NCBI GenBank assembly: GCA_038087875.1
Contig: JAXLNO010005921.1
Location: forward strand, 124,001 to 188,000
Reading direction: 5' to 3'
Length of the DNA stretch: 64,000 nucleotides
From: Malacoraja senta
Taxonomy: Eukaryota
Below the pieces are notes generated by a model, which did not search any database, was not told where the DNA came from, and was given only the letters and a program-made list of their open reading frames with translations. Position 1 is the first letter of the stretch; every line of letters starts with the position of its first letter. The translations under genes were made by a program, and so were the position numbers. Below, piece after piece: positions 38,895 through 64,000 of this stretch.

Positions 38895-39392
38895 CATAGA
38901 ACATAGAACAGTACAGCACAATAACAGGCCCTTTGACCCACAATGTTTGTGCCGAACATGATGCCAAGACCAATTGTTATCTGCTTGCACATAATCCATA
39001 TCCATCCATACCCTGCATATACATGTGCCTATCTAAAAGTCTCTTAAATGCCACTATCATATCTGCTTCCACCACCACCCCCGGCAGCACATTCCAGTCA
39101 CTCGCCACCCTTGGCGTAAAACACTTGTCCTGCACATCTTTTTTAAACTTTGCCACTCATTGCAAAGCTATACCTGCTCTTATTTGATATTTCCATCCTG
39201 GGTAAAAAGTCAGATGGTCTACCCTATCGCTACTCCTCCCAGTTTGATATATTACTGTCAGGTCTCCCCTCAATCCCCGACATTCCAGAGAAAACAATCC
39301 AACTGCCCAGTCTGTCCAACTTCTCCCTGTGGCTAATACCCCACTAATCCAGGCATCATTCCGGTAGACCTCCTCTGTATCCCAACGGAAGC
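38895..39392 (-). mobile_element. CR1 3' fragment overlapping the end of the class I terminal exon
   Basis: CR1 frame IQRRSTGMMPGL...REKLDRLG; tail (ttctatg) near 38895. Confidence 0.85.
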
Positions 39393-39576
39393 TGATTGTG
39401 CTTCATGGTCACTGCAGTCCGCTGCTGGTCTCTGCTGTTGTCAGCTGGTCCCTGTTCATTGAAAGGTTTCATCTTTTTCCTCTTCTTCCAGCAACCAATT
39501 CCAAGGATGATCCCCAGGAGAATAAGAGGAACAATTACAGCTCCAGTCACGATCCTAATCTTTATATCTTCTTTCG
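39356..39576 (-). CDS. Probable TM/cytoplasmic terminal exon of the class I gene: ...KEDIKIRIVTGAVIVPLILLGIILGIGCWKKRKK...LPE*
   Basis: About 21-aa hydrophobic stretch followed by a basic stop-transfer KKRKK, on the expected strand and 3 kb downstream of alpha3. Acceptor ambiguous: phase-1 in-frame options at 39576 (cag|CG) or 39600 (aag|TC), both with weak pyrimidine tracts. Confidence 0.72.
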
Positions 39577-40803
39577 CTGCCATGTATTGATCAATAACGA
39601 CTTTGTAATGATTTTATTATCTACATTAAACTAGCACTGTTCATATCTAATTACAAAGTAACAAAGTCTTAGATTTATGTAATTGTCCAGACGATGGATG
39701 TTTAAATAGATCAATGAAAAATCTTTGAAGTTCATATTAGCGTTGAGATTTTATCTGCAGCATTTAATTATGAATTTAAAGAATCAAGCATATGTCAGAA
39801 ATAAAGATTCAAGATTCAAGATATTTTATTTGTCACATTCACATACACCCGGGTGTAGTGAAGTGAAATGCTTTTTGCCATTATGCAGCACAAAAAAGAG
39901 AAGAATACAGACATCACACCAAGATAGTCTTAACACTGAACATCCCCCCACAATGGCTCCCACCATGAGGGAAGGCACAAAGTCCAGTCCCCCACCCCAG
40001 TTCACCCATAGTCGGGCCCATTGAGGCCTCCACAGTTGCCTCTACGGAGGCCCGATGTTCCAGGCCGTTCTCGGCGGGTGATGTTGCTCCGGCGACGGGA
40101 GAGTCCTCCCAGCGGCCTGGGAACCCTGGAACGGCCGCTTCCGCACTGGGGGCCGCGGCTTCCGAAGCCAACAAGGCCGCGCCGGTTGGAGCTCCACAAC
40201 TGGCGCTCTCATATAGAGATCCCAGGCTCCCGGTGTAAAGTTCAGCGCCGCTGCCCGCAGCTGGTCGCTCCACAGTCCCGCAGCCCCGCGATGTTTTCTC
40301 CAGTGATCCTCAGCTCACCGGAGCTCCAGCGCGGCGACCCGGGCAAGGCATCGCCCGCTCCGCGATAGCGCTCCAGCGCTGTGCCGCCGCCGAAGCCGAG
40401 GCTCTGGGCGGTCCCCGACAGGAAACGCCGCTCCAGGCCTGCTGGTAGGCCGCGAGGACGGGTCGAAGCTGCAGCCCGGAGAAAAGCTGCCTCTCCGGCC
40501 AGGTAGGGACCCTGAAAGGTAGTTTCCCCCTTCCCCCCCCACACAAAAAAGTCTAGACCTCCAAAACAAAACACTTTACTGACTAAAATAAAAAAGAAAG
40601 GTGAAAGGACAGACAGGTCAGCGCCCCCGGTGGTCTATTTGCAGTGTAGAGGTCAACAAGGCTATTTTCTTATGTTGACCATTGTTATTTTAGCAAATAA
40701 AAGTGAACCCATTTATAGTTGATAAAACTTCAAAGGTTTTAAACTTTGCTGATATTTAAATATCTGAGAGTTTGATATTTTCACACACACACACGCACGC
40801 ACG

Positions 40804-40844
<41 letters not shown>

Positions 40845-41029
40845 TGCTACTTCAGACTGATAATGAGGTTGGATGTGGCACCACTATTGGCCTTTTGTGC
40901 AACTAACTACTATCAAAAAAATTAGCTAGATGCCCAAGAAATAAGATAAGAGACCTTGGCCAGGATCAGCCTATCTTGCTTCCTACATTTGGATGTGTGA
41001 GTTAAGGGTGACAAGAATAATTTTTACCA

Positions 41030-41820
41030 TTGGAGCAGAAGTAGGCCTTTCAGTCCATTGAGTCTACTCCACCATTCAGTCATGGCAGATCTATTTTTAC
41101 CTCTGAATCCCATTCTCCAGCCTTCTCCCTGTAACTTTTGGCACTCATACTAATCAAGAACCTATCATTCTCTGCTTTAAAATATGCAATGACTTGACCC
41201 ACACAGCTGTCTGTATCAATGAATTCCACAGATTCACCACCCTGTGACTAAAGAAATTCCTCCTCATCTCCATTTTGAAAGTACGTATTTTATTGTGAGG
41301 CTGTGCTAGACTCTCCCATTACTGAAAACATCCTATCCACATCCACCAACTGGGACTTTCATTAACTGGTAGGTTTCAGAGATTTCCCCCTCATCCTTCT
41401 AAATTCCCATGAGTAGAAGCCCAGAGACTTCAAACATTCCTCATACGTTAAATCAATCATCCCCAGGACATACTTCCTCTGGACCCTCTCCAAAGCCAGC
41501 ACATCCTTTCTAATATGGAGCCCAAAACTGCTCACAATATTCCAAATGTGTCTTCACCAGTGCCCGATAAATCCTCAGCATTATATCATTGTTTTTATAT
41601 TCTAGTCCCCCCGAAATGAATGCTGGCATTGCATTTGCCTTACTTACCACTGACTCAATCTGCAAATGAACTATTTGGGAATCCTGCACTAGTATTCCCA
41701 CTTTGTAGCCCAGATTTCTGAATTCTCTCCCCATTTAGAAAATAGTCTATGTCTTTATTCCGACTGCCAAAATGTAAAACCAGACACTTGCTACACTGTA
41801 TTCCATTTGGCTCTGCTTTG
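41030..41820 (-). mobile_element. CR1 3' fragment in the alpha3-TM intron
   Basis: KANAMPAFISGGLEYK...THLEYCEQFWAPY. Confidence 0.85.
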
Positions 41821-42577
41821 CCCACTCGGTGGAACTGCTGCCTTACAGCGCCAGAGACCCGGTTCAATTCTGACTACGGGTCCCGTCTGTACAGAGTTTT
41901 GTACCTTCTCCCCGGGACTTGCGTGGGTTTTGCCTGGATCTCCGGTTTCCTCCCTCAGTCCAAAGACAGACAGGTTTGTAGGTTAATTGGCTTGGTATAA
42001 TTGTAAATTGTCCCCTAATAAGTAAGATAATGTAAGTGTGCAGGGATCGCTGGTTGACGCAGACTCGGTGGGCTGAAGGGCTGGTTTCTGGGCTGTATCT
42101 CTTAAACTAAAACCACATTCCATTGACTATCAATAATTCTGGGCAATTAGATAACCACAAATTAATAATGGGTGGCACAGTGGCGTAGCAGTAGAGCTGC
42201 TTCCTTACTGCACCAGAGACCTGGGTTCGATCCTGACTACAGGTGCTGTCTGCAAGGACATTGTATGTTCTCCCTGTGACTGCGTGGGTTTTCTCCGGGT
42301 GCTCCGGTTCCCTCCCACACTCCAAAGAAATATGGGCTTGAAGGTTACTTGGCTTAGGTAAAATTGTAATTTGTCCCCAGTGTGTTGGTTAGTGTAAATG
42401 TACGGGATGATCACTGTTCAGCGAGGACTCAGTGAGCTGAGGGGTCTGTATCTGCACCATATCTCTAAAGTTTAAAGTCTAAATGCACAGCTTAGTTAAG
42501 AGTGTGAGTTGAGGCTGTTATCTCAGTCCAGGAGGTTTATTGTCTCAAGTGATCAGCCGCATTGACTTGCCACTTAC

Positions 42578-42853
42578 CCTGTGGAACATTGACTCCCTGC
42601 AGCAGAGTTGCATGTTCGATGTAACAGGAGAATTTTGCCACATCTTCTCTACTCAGTTGAATTGTATTCTTCAGCTGGTAAGTCCCATCCCAATTGGGCA
42701 ACAGATCATCACTGGATTCAGACTTGTGGACCCCCTCACCATCTCTCAGCCACGTTACATCGATGGCCCGTGGCTAGAAGCCTGTGACAAGGCAGGAGAG
42801 TCTCAGTGATTGCGACCCATCACTTTTAATCCCAATAAACACCTCAGAGGTTT
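42578..42853 (-). pseudogene. MHC class I alpha3 (Ig C1) exon with in-frame stop: (E)TSEVFIGIKSDGSQSLRLSCLVTGF*PRAIDVTWLRDGEGVHKSESSDDLLPNWDGTYQLKNTIQLSREDVAKFSCYIEHATLLQGVNVPQ
   Basis: Acceptor ttcttacacttgcag|AA, donor CAGG|gtaagt, 276 bp. Ig C1 motifs LSC, GF(Y)P, VTW, LLPNxDGTYQ and SCxxxH present. Absent from the ORF track because of the TAG. Confidence 0.92.
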
Positions 42854-44059
42854 CTGCAAGTGTAAGAAGCGTCAGAATCAGTGAAGACATGAACAAAAGC
42901 CTTCAATTGTAAGATCACTGCAACTCACCACTTTCCCAATCAGAGTTTTTTCTCTGGCTGAACTAAGTTTCCAGCCTAGACCCAAAATGCTGGAATAACT
43001 CAGCAGGTCAGGCAGCATCTCTGGAGAGAAGGAATGCCCAGAGATGCTTCTGACCCACTGAGTTACGCCAACATCTTCTATCTTCAGTGTAAACCAGCAT
43101 CTGCAGTTCTATCTTGCACAAGGTTTACAGCCTTTTCTCTTTTCATTTTGCATTTCTGACAAAACAACAAAACATTTAGTTTTAATACAACTGACATGCT
43201 CCTTATCTTAGCTCCAGACTTGAACTGACAGCACAGATGAAAGGGGAATGCAGGGCCCAATGGAGGAGTATAACTCACCATTGGGATTGATACTGTAGAC
43301 ATGATTGCTTCTATTTGTTCATGAATCTCAGCTGAATAATAACACTAAATATTCCAAGAGGGAATGGGAGGAAGAAGTTCTTCAACCAGAGAACTGTTGG
43401 AAATTGAATGTCACCATCCCAAGGAGTAATAGAGGCAAATAGAGAATCTGATTGGGTTTTTGATCAGCACAGCAACAGACCCTTCAGGCCACAAGGTCGG
43501 TGCTAAACATAAGACCAAGATACATATTCCTCCATTTCCTGAATATCTATATGACTGTGGATAAAGGACACTGGTACAATATTTATCTTTCACTTGCACT
43601 TCCTACCCACTGGCTCCATCTAAGAGGCATGTTGCCAGACAATTTACTGATACCCTCGCCCAAGAACAGGGTGGCGAAGCGATCGAGCTACTGCCTTACA
43701 GCGCCAGAGACCTGGGTTTGTTACTAACTAACGGGTGCTTGTTTTTACACAGTTTGTACGTTCTCCCTGTGACCTGCGTGGGTTTTATCCGAGATCTTCG
43801 GTTTCCCCTCACGCTCGAAAGACGTACAAATTTGTAGGTTAATTGGATTGGTATAAATGCAAATTGTCCCTAGTGTGTGTAGGATAGTGTTAGTGTGCGG
43901 GCATGGCTGCTCGGTGCGGTGTCGGTGGGCTTCCGAGCTGTATCTCTAAACTAAACTAAATAATTACTCAAGTGACAGCCTGACGTGCATGATATTTCCC
44001 ACCTGATCTATCCAGAGGATATCCTCTGGCCCATCAGTCAGAGTGCCTACGTCGTGTAC

Positions 44060-44341
44060 CTCTCCTCTGTAGTGCTTCTTGTCCACACTCCAGATATATC
44101 CGCAGCCACTTCACACAGTCCTTCTCCAGGAGATCTTTAAAATACTTGTTCATGAAGGTGTTGACATTCCACCGATCTGCTAGCATCTGGAAATCTGGAC
44201 GTAGTGCAATCCAGAACATTCTGTCCTTGTCAAAAGCACAGGCATCCTCCCCATCATAACCCAGTCTGACAAACCCATCAGTGGAATTGTCACTGTCCAC
44301 TTCACAGCCGCAGAAACCCTGCACAAAGAAAACAGCTTGGG
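44060..44341 (-). CDS. MHC class I alpha2 exon: (T)QAVFFVQGFCGCEVDSDNSTDGFVRLGYDGEDACAFDKDRMFWIALRPDFQMLADRWNVNTFMNKYFKDLLEKDCVKWLRIYLECGQEALQRR
   Basis: Acceptor cccctacctcag|CC, donor AGAG|gtacac, 282 bp open. Q..GCE, GYDGED, W133, RW147 and C164VxWLxxYL motifs present. Confidence 0.95.
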
Positions 44342-45407
44342 CTGAGGTAGGGGTGGAGGATTTGGGTTGGGGTGAGTGGATGGAAGGGAGAGGCAATTTA
44401 CAAATCAGTTCTCAGCATGGTACAAACAGGCATAACAGAACACAACATAGAGCTGTACAGCACAGGAGCAGGTTTAGTTCAGAGATACAGCGCCGAAACA
44501 GGTCCTTCGGCCCACCGAGTCCGCACTGACCAGTGGTCCCCGCATATTAACACTATCCTACACAGACTACTTTTCTTTCCAGCTTTCTCCACCCTACTCC
44601 ATTACTCTAAATGGTCCTGGTCTCATATGTTTTCTGTCCATTTGTCCACAGCATGCTGCCTGACTCGTTGAGTTCCTCCTGTTTGTTTTTAATTCAGATT
44701 GGCAGCATCTGCAGTTTGCTGTGACTCCATCTTAGCACAATGGATGATCAGTGTGGATTCAGTGAGCAGAAGGGCCGGTTTCCATGATGTGTGACTCAAT
44801 GACCCATGGTCTATATACTGAGGGCATGGACTAACCTCAAGTGTTGAGGGGGGAAGCTTTACTGTTGTGGATGTAACACTAAAGGAGTTTTGCTGTGTCA
44901 GAAGGGTAGAACTCAGATTCTGCACTTTCGTACATAAAGAACAGAGGAAGGAGTGCATTGTCAGATGGGCAATGTTATACAGTGAACAGGTCAGTCTCAA
45001 GGTTAAGGCAATGCAGATGGGTAGTACATCAACGCTGTTGCACAGTGTGGGATTGCTACACTCTCTGTGGATTGCTGCCAATATTGAGGGAATGCTGGAT
45101 TAACAGAATATTATTGTTGAGGGAATACATCATAGTCACCATCAACCAGCTTAAATCAAGGTCCCATCTCTAGGTGATCAGGCTATAAATAAACTAATGG
45201 TTTCTCCCTCATTCCAGCCCAATAAAACAGATGATCCAATCCATCCACTTTTTACTGGTGTTAAATATCAAATGCTTAACCCATAAAGAGACTATCACCA
45301 GCCAACTGTTATCAATGGGTGTTCAGCAGTTAGGACACATTAAATATAGGCGATGGGCCGTGTCTCTATCAAAATGTGATGGAGTAAATGTCTGAAACAG
45401 CATCAAT

Positions 45408-46443
45408 TAGGTATGTTACAAAACCTACCTTCAGTCGCGCTGTAATTCTGCCACTGGCCATATGCGCGATTTTGGCGCCTTTAAGGGGGGGCGGGGTTAA
45501 AACGCGGGTTTCTCCTTCCTTGTCCTAGTTAATATTTTGTTGGAGTACAAGCGCTGGCTGATGAATCGTTCCTACCGGCGTTTTGTGAATTTTTTATTTT
45601 TATTAAATCGTCAATGTCAGCGCTAGAGTAATTTTAAAAGCAGCTCCTGAAGCGTCAACGCCGATAACGGGGACGGATTTCACACACGGGACAGGTAAAC
45701 GAAAGTGGTTTCTTTAAATGTATAAAAGTGCTTCTTAAGAAGCCTTTAATTCACATTTTTTCATGCGACACGGTGATTTTATTCCCCGAACTAACGGCAG
45801 TATTTTTCATGCCAATACGGGGTTAAATTCACCGCAAATGAACGTTCCAAATGATCGCGTTCCAGAAATCCTCACTCGCAAAATGAATTAAATGCCCATT
45901 AATTTACAGGTATTAAACATTCAATTCCTTCCATTTGGCCTGTAAATTCATGAAAATGAGATTTAAAAGTTATGTTATATTGTGAATTATTGTGTGAATG
46001 TTATTTGGACACTTAGGCTATTTAAAAATGTTAATCTATTCTTAAGAAATTGATAGATGTTTAGATCTAGTAATTGAATTTTGTAATTAGCTACAATTAG
46101 GTAACTAACTAATTATATGCTTTAATTTCAAGTCATCCATACTTTCATGTCTTCTAAGTAAGATTGTTTCATATTTGTTTCAGAATGCTTCAATCTATAA
46201 TAACTGAAAATGTCTTTCAGTTATCTTAATTTTTAAGAAAGTTATGGGCTTTTGACTGTCCTCGATCACAGCTTTTGTGTTAAGTCAATGGAAAAGCAAT
46301 AGGGAACAAGATGGCCATAACTTCTTTAATACTGAAGATATGAAAGTGAATTAGGTGTCAAATTAAACTTCTTTTTATGCTTTATCTGATGGGATAAATT
46401 GCAGACTTTATTTTTAAAATCTCAAAATTTTGTAACATTGCTA
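45408..46443. mobile_element. Same non-autonomous repeat, copy B (inverted), inside the alpha1-alpha2 intron
   Basis: High reverse-complement similarity to copy A and the same terminus. Confidence 0.65.
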
Positions 46444-47126
46444 CATCAATGGTGCTGAAGTGAAAAAGGTTGAGAGTTTCTGGTTCCCCTACTGCCTCAG
46501 GAGACTAAGGAAATGCGGCATCTCCAATGACTCTTACAAATGTCTACAAATGTGCCATAGAAAGCATACTGACAGGTTGTATCACAACTTAGTTTGGAAA
46601 GAGTTCTGCCCAAGACCGCTGGAAATTGCAGGGAGGTGGAGATGTAGCACAGTCGATCACACAAACATGATTCCCCACCAGTGAATCCACCTGTATTTCA
46701 ACTGGTTCAGGAAAGCAGACAACATAATCAAAGATTCATCCCGCTCTGGTCATTCCTTCTTCTTCCTGCAGAAGGTACGTAAGCATTAAAGCGTGCACCA
46801 CCAGACTCAGTAACTGTTTCCTCCCCTATGTTGTCTGGTTTATGAACAGTCCTCCCTTATGCTAGGGTTCACCTCAACCCCATTGTAGACACTGGACTTT
46901 GTCTCTGGCACTGGTGCCTTACAATGCTGAGAACTACATTCTGCACTCTTTGCTCTACCTATTGTACGAGTTTGGTTTGATTGTATTTATGAATAGTTTT
47001 CTTTGATGTGATTGACTAACATGCAAAAAAAGTGTATCAGAGAATCATGTGACAGCAACAAAACTAAAACAAAATCCATTTGTTCCATCACTGGGTGTCT
47101 ACCCCAGGTCCGGTCATGACACTTAC

Positions 47127-47387
47127 TCGAGATACCATGTTGCTGTTGGTAGACTATCTCAGCATTTCCTCTGACAATCCCATGAAAACCTGCAACTGTG
47201 ATGGCCATTGAATCCCATTGATCCTGCGGGAAAGACTGGGCCATCCATCGCTGTCTGGGAATAGCCAGCTCTAGTGTGCTTTCAAAATATGCTATCTGGA
47301 GGTCATCCAGCATTGCTACCATACTGTACTCAGGCAGCTCACTCAATCCATGGTTCAACAGGTAGTAAGATGCAAGATGGTGTAAAT
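47127..47387 (-). CDS. MHC class I alpha1 exon: (D)LHHLASYYLLNHGLSELPEYSMVAMLDDLQIAYFESTLELAIPRQRWMAQSFPQDQWDSMAITVAGFHGIVRGNAEIVYQQQHGIS
   Basis: Acceptor ttgtttatgcattgcag|AT, donor TCGA|gtaagt, 261 bp open. H3, L5, LPE, DD and IPRQxWM...W match non-mammalian class I alpha1. Confidence 0.93.
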
Positions 47388-48482
47388 CTGCAATGCATAA
47401 ACAATAATAAATATGATTGTATCATTCACTGAAAATAACTAAGAGTTATTAAACTGATAACAATACAATAACTTTGAATAAGGGAGTCACAAGGACCTGC
47501 AGATGCAAGTGCTGGATGAACTCAGTGGGGCAGGCAGCATCAATGATCAGGTGACAATTTGTGTCAGGAGCCTTTAGTTTAGTTTTTAGCTTAGAGATAC
47601 AGCATGGAAACAGGCCCTTCGGGCCACTGAGTCCACACTGACCAGCAACCCCCACACGCTAACACTATCCTACACACACAAGGGACAATTTACATTCTAC
47701 ACCAAGCCAATTAAACTACAAACCTGTACGTCATGGAATGTGGGAAGAATCTGAAGATCTCAGGAAAAACCCACCCGGTCAGGTGGAGAATGTACAAACT
47801 CCATACAGACAGGACCCGTAGTCAGGATCCAACCTGGGCATTGGTGCTGTAAGGGCGATAAGGCAGCATCTCTAATGCTGCACCACTGAGCCTTCTACAA
47901 GAGTTGGCTAGATGGGCTCTGATACCTATTCCACCAATTGTGGTCGAGGTATTGAATGATCCTATTGGATTGCTTCCCATCTTCAAAGATCTATTATTAT
48001 CTATCATGTCGATACAGCCTACTAGTTACAATATTCCAAAATTCAAAGAATATTTTATTATATTAAGAAAATGGACAACGTCAAGGAGATTTTATAAAAT
48101 CATAGAGAGGTAAAGTCAAAGAGTCATACAGCAGGGAATCAGGGCCTACGGCTGAATGGCCTAATTCAATCATGGCTGCTCTATCTCGCCCTCTCAACCA
48201 CATTCCCTGCTTTCGCCCCATAACCCTTGACACCCATACTGATCAAGAATCTGTCAATATCCACCTGAGAAATATCCATTGACGTGGGCTCCACGGCTGT
48301 CTGAGGAGGCCCATATCCTTCTAAACCTATCTATCCATGTACCAGATTAAATGTTTCTTAAATGTTGCGATAGTACCTGCCTGAACTCCCTTCTCCGGCA
48401 GTTCATTCAGTACTCCCACCAAAGCTATGCCTCTGGTTCTTATTAAATCTTTCCCCCCTCATTTTAAACTTATGTATTCATT

Positions 48483-50008
48483 TTTTGCCCATTTTGGTTT
48501 CACCATGTAGAAATTACACCTGTGTTTATACATAGTCCCCCCATTTCAGGGCACCATAATGTTTGGGACATGGCTTCGCAGATGTATGTAATTGCTCAGG
48601 GGTATTTAAATGCCTCCTTAATGCAGGTATAAGAGAACTCAGCATCTAGTCTTTCCTCCAGTCTTTCCATCACCTTTGGAAACTTTTATTGCTGTTCATC
48701 AACAGGAGGACCAGAGTTGTGCCAATGAAAGTAAAAGAGACCATTATGAGACTGAGAAACAAGAATAAAACTGTTCGAGACATCAGCCAAACCTTAGGCT
48801 TACCAAAATCAAACTGTTTGGAACATCATTAAGAAGAAAGAGAGCACTGTGAGCTTACTAATCGCAAAGGGACTGGCTGGCCAAGGAACACCTCCACAGC
48901 TGATGACAGAAGACTTCTCTCTATAATAAAGACAAAACCCCAATCCTTTACTAATCGCAAAGGGACTGACAGGTCAGAAACACTCATCAGGAGTCAGGTG
49001 TGGATTTGCCAATGACCACTGTCCGCAGAAGACTTCATGAACAGAAATACAGAGACTGCACTGCAAGATGCAAACCACTGTTTAGCCGCAAAAACAGGAT
49101 GGCCGGGTTACAGTTTGCCAAGAAGTACTTAAAAGAGCAACCACAGTTCTGGAAAAAGGTCTTCTGGACAGATGATACAAAGATTAACTTATATCGGAGT
49201 GATGCCAAGAGCAAAGTATGGAGGAGAGAAGGAACTGCCCTAGATCCAAAGCATACCACCTCATCTGTGAAACACGGTGGTGGGGGTGTTGTGGGCTGGG
49301 CATGTATGGCTGCTGAAGGTACTGGCTAACTTAGCTTTGTTGACCATTCAGCTACTGATGGTAGCAGCATAATGAATTCTGAAGTGTATAGACACATCCT
49401 ATATGCTCAAGTTCAAACACATTGGCCTCAAAACACATTGCCCAGCGGTTCATACTACAGCAAGACAATGATCCTAAAGCAACAAAGGAGTTTTTCAAAG
49501 CTAAAAAATTGTTAATTCTTGAGTGGCCAAGACAATCACCCGATCTGAACGCAACTGAGCATGCCTTTGATATGCCAAAGAGAAAACTGAATGGGGACTA
49601 GCCCCCAAAACAAGCACAGGCTGCAATACAGGCCTGGCAGAGCATCGCCAGAGAAGTCACCCAGCAACTGGCGATGTCCATGAATCACAGACTTCAAGCA
49701 GTCATTGCATGCATAGGATATGCAACAAAATACTAAACATGGCTACTTTCATTTACATGACATTGCTGTGTCCCAAACATTATGGTGCCCTAAAATGGGG
49801 CAGACTATGTATTTTGTGACTATGTAAATTGACTGCTGTAATTTCTACATGGTGAAACCAAAATGTTTAAAAAATTGCCTTTTTTTTAATCTGACAATGT
49901 GCACTTTAACCACATGTGATTTTTTTCTATTACAAATCTCAAATTATGGAGTACAGAGGCAAATAAATATATGATGGGTCTTTGTCCGAAACATTATGGA
50001 GGTCACAG
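48483..50008 (+). mobile_element. Tc1-like DNA transposon (IR/DR-type ends), degenerate DD34E transposase
   Basis: CKPLFSRKNR..LQFAKKY...WKKVFWTDDTKINL...KHGGGGVVGWACM, QQDNDPK and WPRQSPDLNATEH. Right end ...ggtcacag|ta at 50008; inverted internal repeats at 48483-48570 and 49769-49865; left end truncated. Confidence 0.9.
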
Positions 50009-51604
50009 TATGTACGATCAATTCACACTGGCCAATTTACCTCTCAGCCTCTCATCTTTGGAATATTGGGAGAAACTGGAATAACCAGAGGAAGCACACA
50101 TGGTTTCAGGGAAAGAATAAAAGTGCCACACAGGTTGTAGTAGAGATCGGGATTGAGTCCAGGTCCTCATAGGCACCATCTCTATGAGCTGCAACCCTGA
50201 AATGCCCATCTGGTGGGAAATCTCTGCATGGAATGGGGCACTTCTGACTTATGAGGACATTGGGATTCTGTAACAGTAAGTGTAAAGAAGACCTTACTGA
50301 TGAGTCCCGACTATCAAGGCTTGGGTGGGGTGGGAGGTGGGGGTGGGGTCGGAGCAGACTATAATAAACAGGGTCTAAACTGAAACTCGACACATACTGG
50401 AGTAACTTAGTGGGTCAGGCAGCATCTCCGGAGAAAAGGAAAAGGTGACGTTTCGGGTCGAGACCCTTCTTCAGACTGAGAATCAGGAGACAGGGAACCA
50501 AGCGATATGAAAAGGTACATAGAACAAATTAATAAAAGATATACCCCCGACTCTGTCTGAAGAAGTGCCTTGACCTGAAACGCCATCTATTCCTTTTCTC
50601 CAGCGATGCTGCCTGACTTCCTGATTTACTCCAGCTTTTTGTGTCTATCTTCGGTGTAAACCAGCATCTGCATCACCAGTCTGAAGAAGGGTCTAGACGC
50701 GAAACATCACCCATTTCGTCTCTCCAGAGATGCTGCATGTCCCGCTGAGTTACTCCAGCTTTTTGTGTCTATCTTCGGTTTAAATCAGCATCTGCAGTTC
50801 CTTCTTACACATCTAAACTGATGTCTAAACTGAAACATCACCTATCCATGTTCTCCAGACATACTGCCTGACCTGCTGAATTACTCCAGCATTTTATGTG
50901 TATTAACCAGCATCTGCATTTTCTTGTTTCTACATGAATAAGCAGTATTTGTTCTGTGATAAAGTTTCCATGCAGCACACCAGACAGTGTCAAAGTTCAG
51001 TGTCAAAGTGAGGTGAGAAGGGGCCCCAAAGGGAGAGTTAGAAGTGTCTGTTTCAGTGTTACCAAGAGAAACATAAGAAGGCTAGTGGAATACAGTAATG
51101 ATAAAATCCACGTGACTTCCCAAAACACTCCACAACCAAGGATTTTTGTTTTATATGTTATTATTTCAACAGGGGAATCACCATTTTATATTTACTTTCA
51201 TCTGATAACAATGGGATTAAACTTTCAGGATGAGTAGGTTTGTAATCTCCAAGCCTTCACGATTGTCAGAATAGTTAGAAAGGAAGCATTGTGTGGGAAG
51301 AAATTGCTCATCAGATTCCCATTAAATCTTCCCCCCCCCCCCCTCAATTTAAACCTATGTCTTCTGGTTCTCGATTCTGTAATCTGTTGAATATGTTGCC
51401 CACTTGAAAATTTCCAGATTTAGATTGATATATTTTTGTTCATTAAGGGTGTAATGGGTTAGAGCTCAGCCACAATGTCTGTGCCGAACATGATGTCAAG
51501 TTAAACTAAACTGCTTGTACATGATTCATATCCCTCAAGTCCCTACATATCCACGTGCCTATCCTCAAGCTTCTTAAATCTCATTATCGTCTTCTGGGGA
51601 AGTC

Positions 51605-53370
51605 GTGGATAGAGCCTGGATTGACACCTGGAAGTATGTTGTTGTGGCGATCAGTGACACATGGTTGCAGGAGGGCTGTGATTGGAAACTAAATATTCCA
51701 GGATTTCGTTGCTTCTGGTGTGATAGAATTGGAGGGTCAAGAGGTGGGGGTGTTGCATTGCTTGTCAAGGAAGATATTACAGCAGTGCTTTGGCAGGATA
51801 GAGTAGAGGGCTCGTCTAGGGAGGCTATTTGGGTGGAACTGAGAAATGGGAAAGGTGTAGCAACACATATAGGGGTGTATTATAGACTGCCTAATGGGGA
51901 GCGAGAATTGGAAGAGCAAATATGTAAGGAGATAGCAGATATTAGTAGTAAGCACAAGGTAGTGATTGTGGGAGATTTCAATTTTCCACACTTAGACTGG
52001 GAAACACTTACTGTAAAAGGGCTGGTTGGTTTGGAATTTGTAAAATGTGTGCAGGATAGTTTTTTGCAGCAATACATAGAGGTACCTACTAAAGAAGGGG
52101 CAGTGCTGGACCTCCTGTTAGGAAATGAGACAGGGCAGGTGGCGGAGGTGGGCGTTGGGGAGCACTTCGGGTCCAGTGATCACAATACCATTAGTTTCAA
52201 TATAATTATGGAGAGGATCAGAACTGGACCTAGGGTTAAAATTTTTGATTGGAGAAAGTCTAACTTTGAGGAGATGCGAAAGGATTTAAAAGGAGTGAAT
52301 TGGGACATGTTGTTTTATGGGAAGGATGTAGTAGAGAAATGGAGGACATTTAAAGGTGACATTTTAAGAATACAGAATCTTTATGTCCCTGTTCGGTTGA
52401 AAGGAAGTAGTAAAAATTGGAAAGAGCCATGGTTTTCAAGGGAAATTGGACACTTGGTTCGGAAAAAGAGAGAGATCTACAATAATTATTGCCAGCATGG
52501 AGTAAATGAGGTGCTTGAGGAGTATAAAGAATGTAAAAAGAATATTAAGAAATAAATTAGAAAAGCTAAAAGAAGATATGAGGTTGCTTTTGCAAGTAAG
52601 GTGAAAGTAAATCCAAAGGGTTTCTACAGCTATATTAATAGAAAAAGGATAATAAGGAATAAAATTGGTCCATTAGAGAGTCAGAGTGGACAGCTATCTG
52701 CAGAGGCAAAAGAGATGGGGGAGATATTGAACAATTTTTTTTCTTCGGTATTCACCAAGGAGAAGGATATGGAATTCTGTGAGTTAAGGGAAACAAGCAG
52801 AGTAGCAATGGAAACTATGAGATTCAAATAAGAGGAGGTGCGGACAGTTTTGAAAAATATGAAAATGGATAAGCCTCCAGGTCCTGACAGGATATTTTCT
52901 AGGGCAGTGAGGGAAGTTAGTGTAGAAATAGCAGGGGCTATGACAAAAATATTTCAAATGTCATTAGAAACGGGAATAGTGCCGGAGGATTGGCGTACAG
53001 CGCATGTTGTTCCGTTGTTTAAAAAGGGTTGTGAGAGTAAACCAAGCAATTATAGACCTGTTAGTTTGACGTCAGTGGTGGGCAAATTAATGGAAATGAT
53101 ACTTAGAGATAATATATATAAGCATCTGGATAAGCAGGGTCTGATTAGGAACAGTCAACATGGATTTGTGCCTGGAAGGTCATGTTTGACTAATCTTCTT
53201 GAATTTTTCGAAGAGGTTACTAGCGAAATTGATGAGGGTAAAGCAGTGGATGTTGTCTATATGGACTTCAGTAAGGCCTTTGACAAGGTTCCTCATGGAA
53301 GGTTGGTTAAGAAGATTCAATTGTTCGGTATTAATGGTGGAGTAGCAAGATGGATTCAACAGTGGCTGAA
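51605..53370 (+). mobile_element. CR1 ORF2 (APE endonuclease + RT N-part), interrupted by stops
   Basis: VGDFNFP, LDLLL, SDH; NYRPVSLTS...QHGF..GRSCLTNL...YMDFSKAFDKV. Confidence 0.93.
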
Positions 53371-53974
53371 TGCAATATGGGATGACTTTGGTGTAATGAC
53401 AAAACATTGTCCTCAATGAGAACTGTGCAATGGTCTTCTGATTTCTGCCAAAGCCATGGTCAACAGATTCACCTGTTGCAGGTGGACAGGAGAGGAGGAG
53501 GTCAAGTAGGTCAATCCCTTGTGTTGGCTCATTCTCTACCTGCTGTAGAAAGAGCCTGGTAGACACATCCTTCAGGGTTCGGCCATCTCAGTGAGTGGTC
53601 GTGTGACCAAGCCACTCCCAATGATGGATGCTGAGGTCCACACCCAGTGTACACTCTGTATTCCTGCTTCTTTTAATGTCATTCGAGATTTTGCTCAGCT
53701 GACCAATAATGGTGGGCATTCATTAGGACAGTGAAAGCTTCCCATGGTGTAATCTGTGGGCTCCTTCCCATGAAGAGGCAAGTGAGGAAACAGCATGTTC
53801 TTTCTCCTTTCACCAGGGCCAATCCTCTCCCCGGGAATGGTTCAGTTTATCCCAATGGGTGCAATGGAATTGCCAGCATGTTTAATGAACACAACCCTCT
53901 ATGGAGGTTTTTTCATCATGGTGCAAGTTCAATTCCAGATGGAATCTTTATTTGTGGTATAATTATATATCTGA

Positions 53975-54760
53975 ACCCATTTCTATTATCTAAATGGTGG
54001 ACGATTTGGAAAAGGGGAGATGCAGCGAGACCTGGGTGTCATGGTACACCAGTCATTGAAAGTAGGCATGCAGGTGCAGCAGGCAGTGAAGAAAGCGAAT
54101 GGTATGTTAGCTTTCATAGCAAAAGGATTTGAGTATAGGAGCAGGGAGGTTCTACTGCAGTTGTACAGGGTCTTGGTGAGACCACACCTGGAGTATTGCG
54201 TACAGTTTTGGTCTCCAAATCCGAGGAAGGACATTATAGCCATAGAGGGAGTGCAGAGAAGGTTCACCAGACTGATTCCTGGGATGTCAGGACTTTCATA
54301 TGAAGAAAGACTGGATAGACTCGGCTTGTACTCGCTAGAATTTAGGAGATTGAGAGGGGATCTTATAGAAACGTACAAAATTCTTATGGGGTTGGACAGG
54401 CTAGATGCAGGAAGATTGTTCCCGATGTTGGGAAAGTCCAGGACAAGGGGTCACAGCTTAAGGATAAGGGGGAAATCCTTTAAGACCGAGATGAGGAAAA
54501 ACTTTTTCACACAGAGAGTGGTGAATCTCTGGAACTCTCTGCCACAGAGGGTAGTTGAGGCCAGTTCATTGGCTATATTTAAGAGGGAGTTAGATGTGGC
54601 CCTTGTGGCTAAAGGGATCAGGGGGTATGGAGAGAAGGCAGGTACGGGATACTGAGTTGGATGATCAGCCATGATCATATTGAATGGCGGTGCAGGCTCG
54701 AAGGGCCGAATGGCCTACTCCTGCACCTATTTTCTATGTATCTATGTATCTATGTATCAA
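53975..54760 (+). mobile_element. CR1 3' fragment with (ctatgtat)n tail
   Basis: ORF 54020-54655 plus 3' UTR. Confidence 0.92.
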
Positions 54761-55234
54761 CACCAGTGGTGCCGGAAACCTGAGCTGGAGGGGGAGTGTC
54801 ATTTAGTTTGACAAGAGGCAGTGTCAGTTACTGTGCAGTGTGAGGGAACCTCAGCTTGTCCTGTGCTGGGCTCAAAGCCATGTCGCTGCTTCTCCAGAAT
54901 TCTACACAAGTTCCTCTGCAGAAGGTCAGTAAACTTCAGACATTATTCTTCATTGGTAATAGTGGATTAAATGAACGCGATTAAATGATTGAAATGTAGT
55001 TTGCAAAACTGATGTACTTCTTCAAATGTTATTGTGAAATGTGTTCTCCTATTACAATGATGGTGTCTTCACTAAAAAGGGAACAAATGTCATTGTTTTT
55101 GCTACATCCGACTGATTAAAATCTAAAATAGCGGTGTTTCTCTTGACTATTCAAATTCAGTTTATTCTTTCCAATGAATAAAGCTAATGTTATTATTGTT
55201 TCAAATGTTTCTATTTTTTTTCCAATGTTCAATA

Positions 55235-55980
55235 GATTCAGGATCAGTTCCTGTGGATTGGAGGGTAGCTAATGTTATCCCGCTTTTTAAGAAATGCGGG
55301 AGAGAGAAAACAGGGAATTATAGACCAGTTAGCCTGACATCGGTGGTGGGGTAGATGCTGGAGTCAATTATAAAAGATGAGATAGCCGCACATTTGGATA
55401 GCAGTAACAGGATCGGTCCGAGTCAGCATGGATTTACGAAGGGGAAATCATGCTTGACTAAATCTTCTGGAATCTTCTGGAGGATGTAACTAGGAAAATG
55501 GACAAGGGAGAGCCAGTGGATGTAGTGTACCTGGACTTTCAGAAAGCATTTGATAAGGTCCCACATAGGAGATTAGTGGGCAAAATTAGGGCACATGGTA
55601 TTGGGGTAGAGTGCTGACATGGATAGAGAAGTGGTTGGCAGACAGGAAACAAAGAGTAGGGATTAACGGGTCCCTTTCAGAATGGCAGTGAGTTGACTAG
55701 TGGGGTACCGCAAGGCTCGGTGCTGGGACCGCAGCTATTTACAATATACATCAATGATTTGGATGAAGGGATTCAAATTAACATTAGCAAATTTGCAGAT
55801 GACACAAAGCTGGGTGGCAGTGTGGACTGTGAGGAAGATGCTATGAGAATACAGGGTGACTTGGACAGGTTGGGGGAGTGGGCAGATGCATGGCAGATGA
55901 AGTTTAATGTGGATAAATGTGAGGTTATCCACTTTGGAGCAAAAACAGGAAGGCAGATTACTATCTAAATGGCGTCAAAT
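55235..55980 (+). mobile_element. CR1 RT fragment (left arm of inverted pair)
   Basis: [14 protein letters not shown]...FADDTKL. Confidence 0.9.
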
Positions 55981-57700
55981 TAACCTTGTAAACCTACGCT
56001 GCATTCCATCAATAGCAAGAATGTCCTTCCTCAAATGTGGAGACCAAAACTGCACACAATACTCCAGGTGTGGTCTCACTAGGGCTCTGTACAACTGCAG
56101 AAGGATCTCTTTGCTCCTATATTGAACTCCTCTTGTTATAAAGGCCAACATGCCATTTGCTTTCTTCACTGCCTGTTGTACCTACATGCTTACTTTCATA
56201 GACTGATGAACAAGGACCCCCAGATCCCGTTGTACTTCCCCTTTTCCCAACTTGACGCCATTTAGATAGTAATGTGCCTTGCTGTTTTTGCTACCAAAGT
56301 GGATAACCTCACATTTATCTGCATTAAACTTCATCTGCCATGCATCTGCCCACTCCCCCAACCTGTCCAAGTCACCCTGCATTCTCATAGCATCCTCCTC
56401 ACAGTTCACACTGCCACCCAGCTTTGTGTCATCTGCAAATTTGCTAATGTTACTTTGAATCTCTTCATCCAAATCATTGATGTATATTGTAAATAGCTGC
56501 GGTCCCAGCACCGAGCATTGCGGTACCCAACTAGTCACTGACTGCCATTCTGAAAGGGACCCGTTAATCCCTACTCTGTGTTTCCTGTCTGCCAAACACT
56601 TCTCTATCCATGTCAGCACTCTACCCCAATACCATGTGCCCTAATTTTGCCCACTAATCTCCTATGTGGGACCTTTTCAAATGCTTTCTGAAAGTCCAGG
56701 TACACTACATCCACTGGCTCTCCCATGTCCATTTTCTTCGTTACATCTTCAAAAAATTCCAGAAGATTAGTCAAGCATGATTTCCCCTTCGTAAATCCAT
56801 GCTGACTCGGACCGATCCTGTTACTGCTATCCAAATGTGAGGCTATTTCATCTTTCATAATTGACTCCAGCATCTTCCCCACCACCGATGTCAGGCTAAC
56901 TGGTCTATAATTCCCTGTTTTCTCTCTCCCGCCTTTCTTAAAAAGTGGGATAACATTAGCTACCCTCCAATCCACAGGAACTGATCCTGAGTCTATAGAA
57001 CATTGGAAAATTACCACCAATGCATCCACGATTTCTAGAGCCACTTCCTTAAGTACCCTGGGATGCAGACCATCAGGCCCTGGGGATTTATCAGCCTTCA
57101 GTCCCATCTGTCTATCCAACACCATTTCCTGCCTAATGTGGATTTCCTTCAGTTCCTCCGTCACCCCAGATCCTCTTGCCACTACTATATCAGGAAGATT
57201 GTTTGTGTCCTCCTTAGTGAAGACAGATCCAAAGTACCTGTTCAACTCATCTGCCATTTCCTTGTTCCCCATAATATAGTCACCTTTTTCAGTCTACAAG
57301 GGTCCAACTTTGGTCTTAACTAATTTTATCCTCTTCACATACCTAAAGAAGCTTTTACTATCCTGCTTTATATTCTTGGCTAGCTTACCCTTCGTACCTC
57401 ATCTTTTCTCCCCGTATTGTCTTTTTGGTTATCTTCTGTTGTTCTTTAAACATTACCCAATCCTCTTGCTTCCCGCTCATCTTTGCTACGTTGTACTTCT
57501 TCGCTTTAATTTTTATACTGTCCCTGACGTCCTTTGTCAGCCATGGTCTCATCCCTTTCTCCCCTTGGAATCTTTCTTCCTCCTAGGAATGAACTGATCC
57601 TGCACCTTCTGTATTATTCCTAGAAACACCTGCCATTTTTGTTCCACTGTCATCCCTGCTAGTGTATCTTTCCAGTCAATTTTGGCCGGCTCCTCCCAGT
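55981..57700 (-). mobile_element. CR1 ORF2 fragment (right arm of inverted pair)
   Basis: ORFs 56613-57272, 56182-56619 and 55975-56169. Confidence 0.92.
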
Positions 57701-58139
57701 CAGTTGAGCTAGTGTCCAAATATACACACAGATGCAGCAAAGAGTCATAGAGCTGTACAGCATGGAAATAGGCCCATTGGCCCAATGCATACATGCCAAC
57801 CAAGTTGTCTATCTGAGCCAGTCCCAACTGCCTGCACCTAACCCATGTCGGTCCATACATTTCCTATCCATAATATTGTGGATAAACAGAAAGACTGAGA
57901 ACTATAGGAATTGTGATTGATTCAGAAATATTGATAAAGATATCTGCGTCTTTGTGCACTAATCACTGAAAGCAGACATGTGATGCAGCCTGCAGTAAGT
58001 AGGCAAGTGATATTTGTTAGTCTTCTCTTCTGGAGTTTTTGAGCACAGTAACAAGATGTCTTGTTGCCATATTACAGGATATTCCTGCGACCACCCCTCG
58101 TGTGCTGTTTTGTTCTCCTTACCCATTAAGGATCAGATA

Positions 58140-61100: not shown

Positions 61101-62370
61101 GCATGGATTTGTGCCTGGAAGGTCATGTTTGACTAATCTTCTTGAATTTTTTGAAGAGGTTACTAGGGAAATTGATGAGGGTAAAGCGGTGGATGTTGTC
61201 TATATGGACTTCAGTAAGGCCTTTGACAAGGTTCTACATGGAAGGTTGGTTAAGAATTGTTGGGTATTAATAGTGGAGTAGCAAGATGGATTCAACAGTG
61301 GCTGAATGGGAGATACCAGAGAGTAATGGTGGATACTGTTTGTCAGGTTGGAGGCCGGTGACTAGTGGGGTGCCTCAGGGATCTGTGTTGGATCCACTGT
61401 TGTTTGTCGTATACATCAATGATCTGGATGATGGTGTGGTAAATTGGATTAGTAAGTATGCAGATGATACTAAGATAGGTGGTGTTGTGGATAATGAAGT
61501 AGATTTTCAAAGTCTACAGAGAGATTTAGGCCATTTGGAAGAGTGGGCTGAAAGATGGCAGATGGAGTTTAATGCAGATAAGTGTGAGGTGCTACATCTT
61601 GGTAGGACAAATCAAAATAGGACGTACATGGTAAATGGTAGCGAATTGAGGAATGCAGTAGAACAGAGGGATCTAGGAATAACTGTGCATAGTTCCCTGA
61701 AGTTGGAATCTCATGTAGATACGGTGGTAAAGAAAGCTTTTGGTCTGCTGGCTTTTATAAATCAGAGCATTGAGTATAGAAGTTGGGATGTAATGTTAAA
61801 ATTGTACAAAGCATTGGTGAGGCCAATTCTGGAATATGGTGTACAATTTTGGTCGCCAAATTATAGGAAAGATGTCAACAAAATAGAGAGAGTACAGAGG
61901 AGATTTACTAGAATGTTGCCTGGGTTTCAGCACCTAAGTTACAGAGAAAGGTTGAACAAGATAGGTCTTTATTCTTTGGAGCGCAGAAGGTTAAGGGGGG
62001 ACTTGATAGAGGTCTTTAAAATGATGAGAGGGATAGACAGAGTTGACGTGGATAAGCTTTTTCCATTGGTAGTAGGGAAGATTCAAACAAGAGGACATGA
62101 TTTGAGAATTAAGGGACAAAAGTTAAGGGGAAACATGAGGGGGAACCTCTTTACTCAGAGAGTGGTAGCTGTGTGGAATGAGCTTCCAGTGGAAGTGATG
62201 GAGGCAGGTTCGATTTTATCATTTAAAAATAAATTGGATAGGTATATGGACGGGAAAGGAATGGAGGGTTATGGTCTGAGTACAGGTAGATGGGACTAGG
62301 TGAGAGTAAGTTTTCGGCACGGACTAGAAGGGCCGAGATGGCCTGTTTCCATGCTGTAATTGTTATATTA
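58140..62370 (+). mobile_element. Near full-length CR1 (ORF1 esterase + ORF2 APE-RT + 3' UTR), disrupted, with nested insertion
   Basis: ORF1 SGNH-type VHIGTND...DGLHLN. ORF2 YFNARS...VAAIS resumes after 59640 and continues through RT to the 3' end. Confidence 0.92.
58848..59640 (-). mobile_element. Rex1/Babar-like LINE 3' fragment nested in CR1
   Basis: KRAHQRLHFLRKL...FYRGTVESVLTYCINMWY...LLPSGKRYRSI; (tttga)n tail; tagt on both sides. Confidence 0.85.
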
Positions 62371-63885: not shown

Positions 63886-64000
63886 CCATTATTACCTCTT
63901 TAATAATTGACTCCAGCATCTTTCCCACCAATGAAGTCAGGCTAACTGGTCTGTAATTCCCCACTTACTCTCTCGCTCCTTTCTTGAAAAGTGGGATGAA

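What the first reader, a model, noticed from the sequence alone, without database searches (positions are those of the whole stretch)
39356..47387. Unannotated non-classical MHC class I gene with CD1-like signatures in a probable skate/ray
Seen: four exons splice in frame into alpha1-alpha2-alpha3-TM-cyt. Recalled from known proteins: alpha1 has MLDDLQI...AI...W (human CD1b WLDDLQI...AI...W) and W-x4-F-x3-QW spacing (CD1d WSQGTFSDQQW). Alpha2 has FFVQGFCGCE (CD1b FEIQGIAGCE), GFVR (CD1b SFLR) and xLLxxxC (CD1 type) in place of the classical YLEGxC. It keeps MHC-I-like LPE, IPRQxWM, GYDGED and RW. Inference: a hybrid class I/CD1-like molecule, possibly a batoid member of the CD1-like shark lineage reported as UFA, or a new lineage. 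This bears on the origin of lipid presentation.
Basis: partly seen in the sequence, partly recalled or inferred. Interest (0 to 1): 0.9.

Follow-up and report, generated by a model that had tools for sequence, protein, structure and literature searches.

The report
Skate UGA-sister class I pseudogene
This is a real skate MHC class I-like gene from a conserved shark-and-ray lineage next to the lipid-binding-type gene UGA, but this copy carries a stop codon, is probably dead, and is neither UFA nor a CD1 gene.

Summary
The reading frame is not open. The Tyr codon of GFYP in alpha3 is TAG here and TAC in four relatives. No leader exon lies in the 16.6 kb upstream, which is filled with LINEs.

The gene belongs to a conserved lineage (my label "A") found mostly once per genome in at least 12 sharks and rays. 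RefSeq calls its members "MR1-like". ML trees place the window copy with little skate (100/99), make lineage A monophyletic (100/100), and make it sister to UGA (99/97; PDB 9CH4).

The CD1b motif matches are real but partial, and they are not conserved within the lineage. Pfam, profile searches and trees give no CD1 affinity, although an AU test cannot exclude it. What is CD1-like is the chemistry: only 2 of 8 peptide-end anchor residues are kept, and 66% of groove positions are apolar, against 42% in classical types.

On this copy's branch substitutions look neutral (19 non-synonymous to 5 synonymous).

An earlier scan note found a broken UGA copy elsewhere in this genome. Interest is moderate.

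The parts
47127..47387 (-). alpha1 exon (phase 1; first full codon at 47385)
   Evidence: Acceptor TTGCAG| and donor |GTAAGT. 92% amino-acid identity to little skate P0001 at E=5.8e-45. The best PDB hit is 9CH4 (UGA) at E=1.3e-21.
44060..44341 (-). alpha2 exon, with the disulfide Cys pair and an extra groove-floor Cys (QGFCGCE)
   Evidence: Pfam MHC_I scores 60.9 bits against MHC_I_3 at 23.1. 96.5% nucleotide identity to L001.
42578..42853 (-). alpha3 (C1-set Ig) exon, interrupted by a stop; it also carries one extra codon relative to its relatives (276 nt against 273 nt)
   Evidence: C1-set scores 34.7 bits on the part after the stop.
42774..42776 (-). in-frame TAG replacing the Tyr codon of the GFYP motif
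   Evidence: The codon is TAC at the same place in L001 and L002 (little skate), L003 (sawfish) and L004 (sevengill shark).
39356..39576 (-). connecting peptide, transmembrane segment and 45-residue cytoplasmic tail, ending in TGA
   Evidence: The homologous single exon exists in L001 and L003. The tail has no YxxPhi motif.
47388..51608 (-). upstream flank (part of intron 1), collinear with the little skate gene but lacking the leader exon
   Evidence: blastn collinearity with L001 at 85-91% identity ends at 51608. The leader lies at L001:100-152, about 1 kb beyond that break.
51605..64000 (.). block of LINE fragments where the leader and promoter would be expected
   Evidence: Pfam finds an endonuclease at 51605-52555 and reverse transcriptase at 61286-62299 and 63062-63964. 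Further reverse-transcriptase-like ORFs appear.

Best explanation
The locus is a skate copy of a conserved elasmobranch non-classical MHC class I lineage, which I call lineage A. Lineage A is the sister and chromosomal neighbour of UGA. In species where the gene is intact, it encodes a leader, an alpha1-alpha2 platform, a C1-set alpha3 domain, a transmembrane segment and a long hydrophilic tail. The platform keeps the class I fold but has replaced the residues that hold peptide ends. Its groove is lined almost entirely with apolar residues. It therefore most likely holds a conserved hydrophobic non-peptide ligand, as is reported for UGA, and displays it at the cell surface with beta2-microglobulin (inferred). 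In this window the copy is disabled. A C-to-G change turns the GFYP tyrosine codon into TAG after 25 residues of alpha3. No leader exon is present within 16.6 kb upstream. The coding changes on this copy's branch accumulate at the neutral ratio. It is therefore most likely a recently inactivated pseudogene or a null allele. Shown: the exons, the lineage placement, the stop codon, the neutral substitution pattern and the groove composition. Inferred: loss of expression, the ligand class and beta2m pairing.
For: Exons and splice sites are. The leader is absent from the window and LINEs lie upstream. For orthology, one RefSeq 'MR1-like' protein per species matches at 54-72% identity in Pristis, Mobula, Hypanus, Pristiophorus, Heptranchias, Scyliorhinus, Stegostoma, Hemiscyllium, Mustelus, Cetorhinus and Chiloscyllium. 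Mean column identity across alpha1-alpha2 is 82%. In the careful ML tree, WIN+P0001 is 100/99, lineage A is 100/100 with species-like branching, and A+UGA is 99/97 (the quick tree agrees). 9CH4 is UGA and 8GM8 is UFA by their PDB titles. A and UGA lie about 42 kb apart on the same strand in sawfish and have consecutive RefSeq numbers in bamboo sharks. Long-term dN/dS between skate and sawfish is 0.27, and 0.18 in alpha1-alpha2. Between the window copy and little skate it is 0.83. The window branch has 19 non-synonymous and 5 synonymous changes, which fits the neutral ratio (p=1.0) and departs from the long-term ratio (p=0.014). At the anchor positions lineage A has F7 H59 Q84 L143 R146 W147 L159 Y171. 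The apolar fraction of 40 groove positions is 0.66 in A, against 0.53 in UGA, 0.55 in UFA, 0.57 in the CD1b-like protein and 0.42 in classical types. An AF2 model of the sevengill ortholog (pLDDT 89.5) fits 9CH4 best (TM 0.92-0.95, rmsd 1.5-1.6 A, Z 29.4). The literature describes UFA and UGA as lipid-binding and CD1-like (PMC12562908, PMC10751288).
Against: The stop is a single base, and everything else in the four exons is open. The window's alpha1-alpha2 deviates at only 4 of 90 lineage-invariant columns, no more than intact orthologs do in a leave-one-out comparison. The lesion could therefore be very recent, allelic, or a base-calling error. The leader could lie beyond the window end. The little skate copy also shows a raised non-synonymous to synonymous ratio (16:6), so relaxed constraint may be a general feature of skates rather than a sign of death of this copy. 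The substitution counts are small. The ligand class rests on alignment-based proxies and on analogy with UGA. No coordinates, expression data or binding data were available. The HLA-numbered groove positions were mapped from my own knowledge of the class I fold.
Confidence: 0.72

Rival explanations
1. It is a working gene. The TAG is an assembly or base-calling error, or a null allele carried only by the sequenced haplotype, and the leader exon lies beyond the window end.
For: There is only one lesion. All splice sites are intact. Alpha1-alpha2 is no more deviant than intact orthologs. Intron 1 is about 10 kb in little skate and sevengill shark, so a distant leader is normal for this gene.
Against: A substitution error is less likely than an indel error in modern assemblies. 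The window branch shows a neutral substitution ratio. Collinearity with the intact skate gene breaks at a LINE block about 1 kb short of where the leader should lie. No skate other than Leucoraja erinacea contributed a protein of this lineage to the protein search.
Confidence: 0.15
2. It is the batoid ortholog of UFA, the first CD1-like shark lineage reported.
For: It shares the MLDDLQI stretch and the PRQ.WM stretch with the UFA structure 8GM8.
Against: 8GM8 is titled UFA and groups with P0016, P0030 and P0192. These have an extra Cys pair in alpha2 and a short hydrophobic C-terminus. The window's alpha1-alpha2 is 29% identical to the ray UFA-type protein and 38.5% identical to UGA. The lineage profile scores 8GM8 at 78 bits and 9CH4 at 175 bits. 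In the trees UFA is a separate 100/100 clade. Rays carry both gene types on the same chromosome.
Confidence: 0.02
3. It is a true CD1 relative, so that lineage A plus UGA share a more recent ancestor with CD1 than with other class I genes. The motif matches would then be inherited.
For: The CD1b-type motifs are real. Weak sub-threshold MHC_I_3 hits occur in lineages A and UGA but not in a shark multicopy class Ib protein. An AU test does not reject an A+UGA+CD1 clade (p=0.34). The groove is apolar.
Against: Alpha1-alpha2 identity to the CD1b-like protein is 21%, against 19% for an unrelated shark class Ib protein. The lineage profile gives it 15 bits, the lowest score in the set. In the careful tree CD1b sits on a branch of length 2.6, nearest to tetrapod class I, with no supported link to A or UGA. 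LDDLQI is not conserved within the lineage. Lineage A has no YxxPhi tail. Only one CD1 sequence was available.
Confidence: 0.08
4. The stop is tolerated. Either skipping the symmetric 276-nt alpha3 exon gives an alpha1-alpha2-TM two-domain protein, or the truncated alpha1-alpha2 product is secreted.
For: All exons are in phase 1-1, so skipping alpha3 keeps the frame. Platform-only class I relatives exist in mammals (my own knowledge).
Against: Alpha3 downstream of the stop is still a good C1-set domain, so the loss is recent rather than an adapted architecture. There is no leader exon. No transcript evidence exists.
Confidence: 0.03

Closest known systems
UGA, shark non-classical MHC class I (PDB 9CH4); the P0002/P0165/P0169 lineage
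   Same: It is the sister clade (99/97) and the chromosomal neighbour. It is the best sequence and structural match: about 42% identity in alpha1, 175 bits to the lineage profile, TM 0.92-0.95. It shares AGFHG in the alpha1 helix, YFK.LLE.DC in the alpha2 helix, L at position 159 and a bulky apolar residue at 143. It occurs in both sharks and rays.
   Different: UGA keeps Y7, Y59 and K146. It has a short tail ending in a YxxPhi motif (YNxV in sharks; YQTI, YENI or YESI in rays). It has Phe where lineage A has the extra groove-floor Cys. Its groove is less apolar (0.53 against 0.66). Lineage A has a long Gln-rich tail without YxxPhi.
UFA, shark non-classical MHC class I (PDB 8GM8); the P0016/P0030 lineage
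   Same: It is an elasmobranch class Ib gene on the same chromosome. It has the MLDDLQI-type strand in alpha1 and has lost the peptide anchors.
   Different: It is a separate 100/100 clade, only 29% identical in alpha1-alpha2. It has a rebuilt alpha2 with an extra Cys pair and a short hydrophobic C-terminus with no cytoplasmic tail. RefSeq names some members CD1d-like.
CD1 (tetrapod lipid-presenting molecules)
   Same: It has an apolar groove, has lost the peptide-end anchors, and shares a few short motifs with CD1b (LDDLQI, AI...W, GCE, LL...C).
   Different: Overall identity is 21%. The Pfam CD1 model is below threshold. There is no supported tree link and no YxxPhi sorting tail. In sequence, the platform of lineage A is closer to fish classical class I and MR1.
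MR1
   Same: The best PDB sequence hits for the alpha2 exon are MR1 (64 bits). RefSeq names the lineage 'MR1-like'. Foldseek E-values are comparable.
   Different: The Schiff-base residue Lys43 aligns with Ala here and with Cys in some sharks. There is no tree support. MR1 itself was not in my trees.
Classical-type UAA and UDA class I of cartilaginous fish
   Same: Same exon plan, same disulfide pairs, same C1-set alpha3, and location on the same chromosome.
   Different: Classical-type sequences keep Y7 Y59 R84 T143 K146 W147 Y159 Y171, while lineage A keeps only W147 and Y171. The window gene lies outside the UAA-type clade (97/86).

Membership tests
MHC class I superfamily | alpha1-alpha2 platform matching Pfam MHC_I above its cut-off | tested here: met
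   The alpha2 exon alone scores 60.9 bits against a cut-off of 28.3. Alpha1 adds 18.4 bits. Orthologs score 81-97 bits.
MHC class I superfamily | membrane-proximal C1-set Ig domain with its Cys pair, and phase-1 exon-per-domain structure | tested here: met
   C1-set scores 34.7 bits (cut-off 21) on the post-stop part. The LSCLV and FSCYIEH Cys residues are present. All exons are in phase 1.
Functional protein-coding gene | open reading frame from a leader exon to the stop | tested here: not met
   TAG lies at 42776-42774. No leader exon is found in the window.
Lineage A (UGA-sister, RefSeq 'MR1-like' of sharks and rays) | falls inside the clade, and keeps the lineage-invariant alpha1-alpha2 columns | tested here: met
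   The clade is 100/100 and WIN+P0001 is 100/99. 86 of 90 invariant columns are kept.
UGA (PDB 9CH4) | falls inside the UGA clade | tested here: not met
   UGA is 100/100 and lineage A is 100/100 as reciprocal sister clades. Both are present in the same species.
UGA (PDB 9CH4) | short cytoplasmic tail ending in a tyrosine YxxPhi motif | tested here: not met
   The window and lineage A tails are long and lack the motif.
UFA (PDB 8GM8) | falls inside the UFA clade and shares its alpha2 architecture | tested here: not met
   It is a separate 100/100 clade. Identity is 29%. 8GM8 scores 78 bits against 9CH4 at 175.
CD1 | matches the CD1 platform model (Pfam MHC_I_3) above its cut-off | tested here: not met
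   Scores are 23.1 bits for the window's alpha2 and 22.7-32.8 for orthologs, against a cut-off of 35. The CD1b-like P0160 scores 235.9.
CD1 | groups with CD1 in phylogeny | tested here: inconclusive
   There is no supported link. The AU test does not reject A+UGA+CD1 (p=0.34). Only one CD1 sequence and no MR1 or EPCR were available.
CD1 | deep apolar groove that binds lipid tails | tested here: inconclusive
   By an alignment proxy, 62-68% of 40 groove positions are apolar, against 57% in the CD1b-like protein. Groove volume and binding could not be measured.
MR1 | Lys43 for Schiff-base capture of ligand | tested here: not met
   In the HMMER alignment of the Stegostoma ortholog to MR1, the Lys column holds Cys. 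The window has Ala at that position (LELAIPRQ).
Classical UAA / UDA | conserved residues that bind peptide N and C termini | tested here: not met
   Only 2 of 8 are kept, W147 and Y171. The figure of 8 of 9 for UDA is from my memory of Almeida et al. 2020, which is not held in the library.

The most novel reading that the evidence does not exclude
Lineage A may be a third member of the elasmobranch 'CD1-like' group, beside UFA and UGA, that has not yet been named. It would be about 300 million years old or more, and mostly single-copy. It has the most apolar predicted groove of the three, a different trafficking tail, and an invariant unpaired cysteine on the groove floor at the position equivalent to HLA residue 99. 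That cysteine could tether or sense a ligand. Skates would then be duplicating and losing copies of it. If an earlier scan note is right that UGA is also broken in this genome, this skate may be losing the whole neighbouring gene pair.
Probability: 0.3. Interest if true: 0.6.

Novelty: new member of a known kind. Interest (0 to 1): 0.4.

Why it matters
The origin of non-peptide antigen presentation is an open question. Specialists have recently reported UFA and UGA as shark and ray molecules that bind lipids. This window shows that UGA has a conserved neighbouring sister gene with an even more apolar groove, different end anchors and a different tail. Public annotation hides this gene under the name 'MR1-like'. 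That gives a third, directly testable candidate for lipid or small-molecule presentation in the oldest jawed vertebrates. The window copy itself adds little, because it is a dead or null copy. It does indicate that skates have duplicated this gene and are eroding the copies.

Tried and rejected
A full-text search for the PDB codes 9CH4 and 8GM8 returned only unrelated papers. The identities came later from Foldseek entry titles.

No primary paper on UFA or UGA is in the library. Almeida et al. 2020 and 2021 are not held. The supplements of the 2023 MBE paper do not name UFA loci.

A repeat PDB search on the alpha2 exon added nothing.

The leader exon was sought by peptide scan, by blastn and by short-word blastn, and none was found in the window.

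The sevengill UGA protein is not on record for a locus look-up.

A look-up of scan notes by sequence was blank.

No other class I exon or MHC marker gene lies in the 64 kb window (tblastn with all 193 proteins held at that point), so synteny cannot be read from this window.

Structural searches do not separate CD1, MR1 and classical class I for this fold (Z 26.7-29.4 across all). They were therefore not used to argue for or against CD1.

The source species could not be fixed. Divergence from both little skate copies is about 11-13% in introns. This fits either a third paralog or an ortholog in another skate genus.

A possible identity with the old dogfish 'NC1/UCA' gene could not be tested directly. 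No Squalus protein appeared among the lineage A or UGA hits.

Full report
**Observation**

On the minus strand there are four exons with canonical AG/GT borders, all in phase 1:
- alpha1: 47387-47127
- alpha2: 44341-44060
- alpha3: 42853-42578
- TM plus tail: 39576-39356, ending in TGA

The same borders are used in the homologous genes of little skate, sawfish and sevengill shark.

The domains are real. Pfam MHC_I gives E=1.6e-16 on the alpha2 exon and C1-set gives 2.2e-8 on alpha3. The alpha1 exon finds a little skate protein at E=5.8e-45.

- The alpha3 exon holds an in-frame TAG at 42776-42774, in place of the tyrosine of the GFYP motif. The two little skate copies, the sawfish gene and the sevengill shark gene all have TAC there.
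- There is no leader exon. The lineage has a conserved leader, MLL(F/V)TLLN...VSS followed by a GTAAGC donor, lying 5-11 kb upstream of alpha1 in the sevengill shark, sawfish and little skate genes. Nothing like it is in the window. Collinearity with the little skate locus stops at 51608, about 1 kb short of the leader position. From there to the window end the sequence is LINE endonuclease and reverse-transcriptase fragments.

**What it belongs to**

The closest protein is a partial RefSeq model from Leucoraja erinacea, P0001. It is 85% identical before correction and about 90% identical over kept columns once 12 residues of intron read-through in that model are removed.

Behind it come mostly one protein per species from Pristis, Mobula, Hypanus, Pristiophorus, Heptranchias, Scyliorhinus, Stegostoma, Hemiscyllium, Mustelus, Cetorhinus and Chiloscyllium. 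They are 54-72% identical to P0001 (54-73% to the window protein) and all are auto-named 'MR1-like'. Pristiophorus and Leucoraja each contributed a second hit. I call this lineage A. Its alpha1-alpha2 is very conserved, with 82% mean column identity between sharks and rays.

A second lineage (P0002, P0162-P0174) and a third (P0016, P0030, P0192) share the alpha1 signature. Foldseek entry titles identify their solved structures:
- 9CH4 is 'shark nonclassical MHC class I, UGA'.
- 8GM8 is 'shark nonclassical MHC class I, UFA'.

A careful ML tree of 61 sequences gave these supports (the 103-sequence quick tree agrees):

| Grouping | Support |
|---|---|
| window + little skate | 100/99 |
| batoid lineage A | 100/100 |
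| lineage A | 100/100 |
| lineage A + UGA | 99/97 |
| UFA (separate clade) | 100/100 |
| UAA-type clade (separate) | 97/86 |

Deeper nodes are unresolved.

A and UGA coexist in the same species. They lie about 42 kb apart on one strand in sawfish. They have consecutive RefSeq numbers in two bamboo sharks. They share chromosomes with classical-type class I genes.

The window gene is therefore not UFA, UGA, UAA or UDA-like. It is the UGA-sister lineage. I found no curated name for it. Whether specialists already have one cannot be told from the library.

**CD1 claim**

I checked the motifs against a tool-supplied lemur CD1b-like protein, P0160. LDDLQI, the AI...W spacing, the GCE strand and the LL...C helix stretch do match. 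The homology tests, however, do not support a CD1 affinity:

| Test | Result |
|---|---|
| alpha1-alpha2 identity, window vs CD1b-like | 21% |
| alpha1-alpha2 identity, unrelated shark class Ib vs CD1b-like | 19% |
| alpha1-alpha2 identity, window vs UGA | 38.5% |
| LDDLQI within lineage A | batoids only; sharks have LDDYEI or LDDYHI |
| Pfam CD1 model (cut-off 35) | 23-33 bits; a true CD1b scores 236 |
| lineage A profile vs PDB | 9CH4 175, carp class I 124, MR1 116, shark UAA 107, UFA 78, HLA 69; no CD1 in the top 60 |
| lineage A profile vs CD1b-like | 15 bits, last of 193 |
| position of CD1b in the tree | long branch nearest tetrapod class I |
| AU test of an A+UGA+CD1 clade | not rejected, p=0.34 |

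The W-x4-F-x3-QW spacing is also the ordinary fish class I spacing, as seen in P0017. Homology to CD1 is thus neither supported nor excluded.

The resemblance is chemical:
- Lineage A has F7 H59 Q84 L143 R146 W147 L159 Y171 where classical types have Y Y R T K W Y Y.
- 66% of 40 groove positions are apolar and 5% are charged. The corresponding apolar fractions are 42% in classical types, 53% in UGA, 55% in UFA and 57% in the CD1b-like protein.

The mapping to HLA numbering is my own. Unlike UGA, lineage A lacks a YxxPhi tail.

An AF2 model of the sevengill ortholog (pLDDT 89.5) fits 9CH4 best, with rmsd 1.5-1.6 A. Classical, MR1, YF1 and CD1 structures all score within a narrow band, so the fold does not discriminate between them.

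**State of this copy**

- Between skate and sawfish, dN/dS is 0.27 overall and 0.18 in alpha1-alpha2. This shows long-term constraint.
- Between the window copy and little skate, dN/dS is 0.83.
- With sawfish as outgroup, the window branch has 19 non-synonymous and 5 synonymous changes. This fits the neutral ratio (p=1.0) and departs from the long-term ratio (p=0.014). The little skate branch has 16 and 6.
- Two of the window's four deviations from invariant columns hit groove positions (F7S and H59Q). Four deviations is within the range of intact orthologs.
- Little skate has one intact copy, L001, once the leader that I located is added. It also has one decayed alpha2-alpha3 fragment with a stop, a lost donor and a frameshift, L002.

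Skates therefore carry a small, eroding family. I read the window copy as a recent pseudogene or null allele. An error or polymorphism remains possible at about 15%.

**Earlier scan notes**

Notes on this window had already flagged the TAG and the loss of anchors, and I confirm both. Notes on another piece of this genome describe a frameshifted UGA copy with a YQNI tail. My results agree that UGA is the lineage with the tyrosine tail, but I did not examine that other locus.

**Verdict**

This is a real gene body of a conserved UGA-sister class Ib lineage in a skate, disabled in this copy. It is not UFA and not demonstrably CD1-related, but it has a strikingly apolar groove. The window itself is of modest value. 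The lineage is a reasonable target for ligand studies.

Noticed in passing
L001:100-152 and L001:10001-22177 (Leucoraja erinacea JAMYXN010000384.1): The RefSeq 'partial' model P0001 can be completed. A leader exon (MLLFTLLNTYGVATVSS plus a phase-1 GTAAGC donor) lies 9.9 kb upstream of alpha1. The model also reads 12 residues into the intron after alpha2, although the normal donor and acceptor are intact. With these corrections little skate has a full-length open gene.
   Followed up: partly
L002:11717-14218 (Leucoraja erinacea JAMYXN010000412.1; protein model P0090): This is a second little skate copy, consisting only of alpha2 and alpha3. Alpha2 has a stop at the Cys164-equivalent codon and a GC in place of the GT donor. 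Alpha3 is frameshifted. It is a decayed fragment that is nevertheless annotated as a protein.
   Followed up: partly
window 44305-44313 region (QGFCGCE) and all lineage A orthologs (alignment A1): An extra cysteine lies two residues before the disulfide Cys, at the groove-floor position equivalent to HLA residue 99. It is invariant in all nine lineage A species aligned and is Phe in UGA. No invariant partner cysteine exists, so it may be free in the groove.
   Followed up: partly
P0079 (Pristiophorus) C-terminus; L004:33443-33815: The cytoplasmic tails of shark lineage A proteins contain tandem copies of a roughly 10-residue Gln-rich unit of the type (N/D)RDQQR.AET. The window tail has a single copy (NSRDQQRTAVT).
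   Followed up: no
P0108, P0117, P0123 (Callorhinchus milii): The chimaera 'MR1-like' and 'ZAG-like' proteins form their own clade. They share H59 (in P0108 only), L143 and Y171 with lineage A. Their relation to A+UGA is unresolved, and they may be the holocephalan counterpart.
   Followed up: no
window 39802-41290 (intron between alpha3 and the TM exon): This stretch has no counterpart in the little skate locus. It contains a G+C-rich segment (about 40000-40570) and a (CA)n/(TG)n microsatellite near 40713-40906.
   Followed up: no
window 5215-9229, minus strand: Three long ORFs (285, 248 and 285 aa) have no Pfam match at E<=0.001. The two at 7578-9229 look by eye like a domesticated or decayed DNA-transposon transposase.
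   Followed up: partly
protein searches: Amblyraja radiata proteins are in the database (P0272). No Amblyraja protein of lineage A or of UGA was returned, while Leucoraja and Rhinoraja supply UGA. This would fit the window's genome being a skate in which both genes are broken, but that is only a guess.
   Followed up: no
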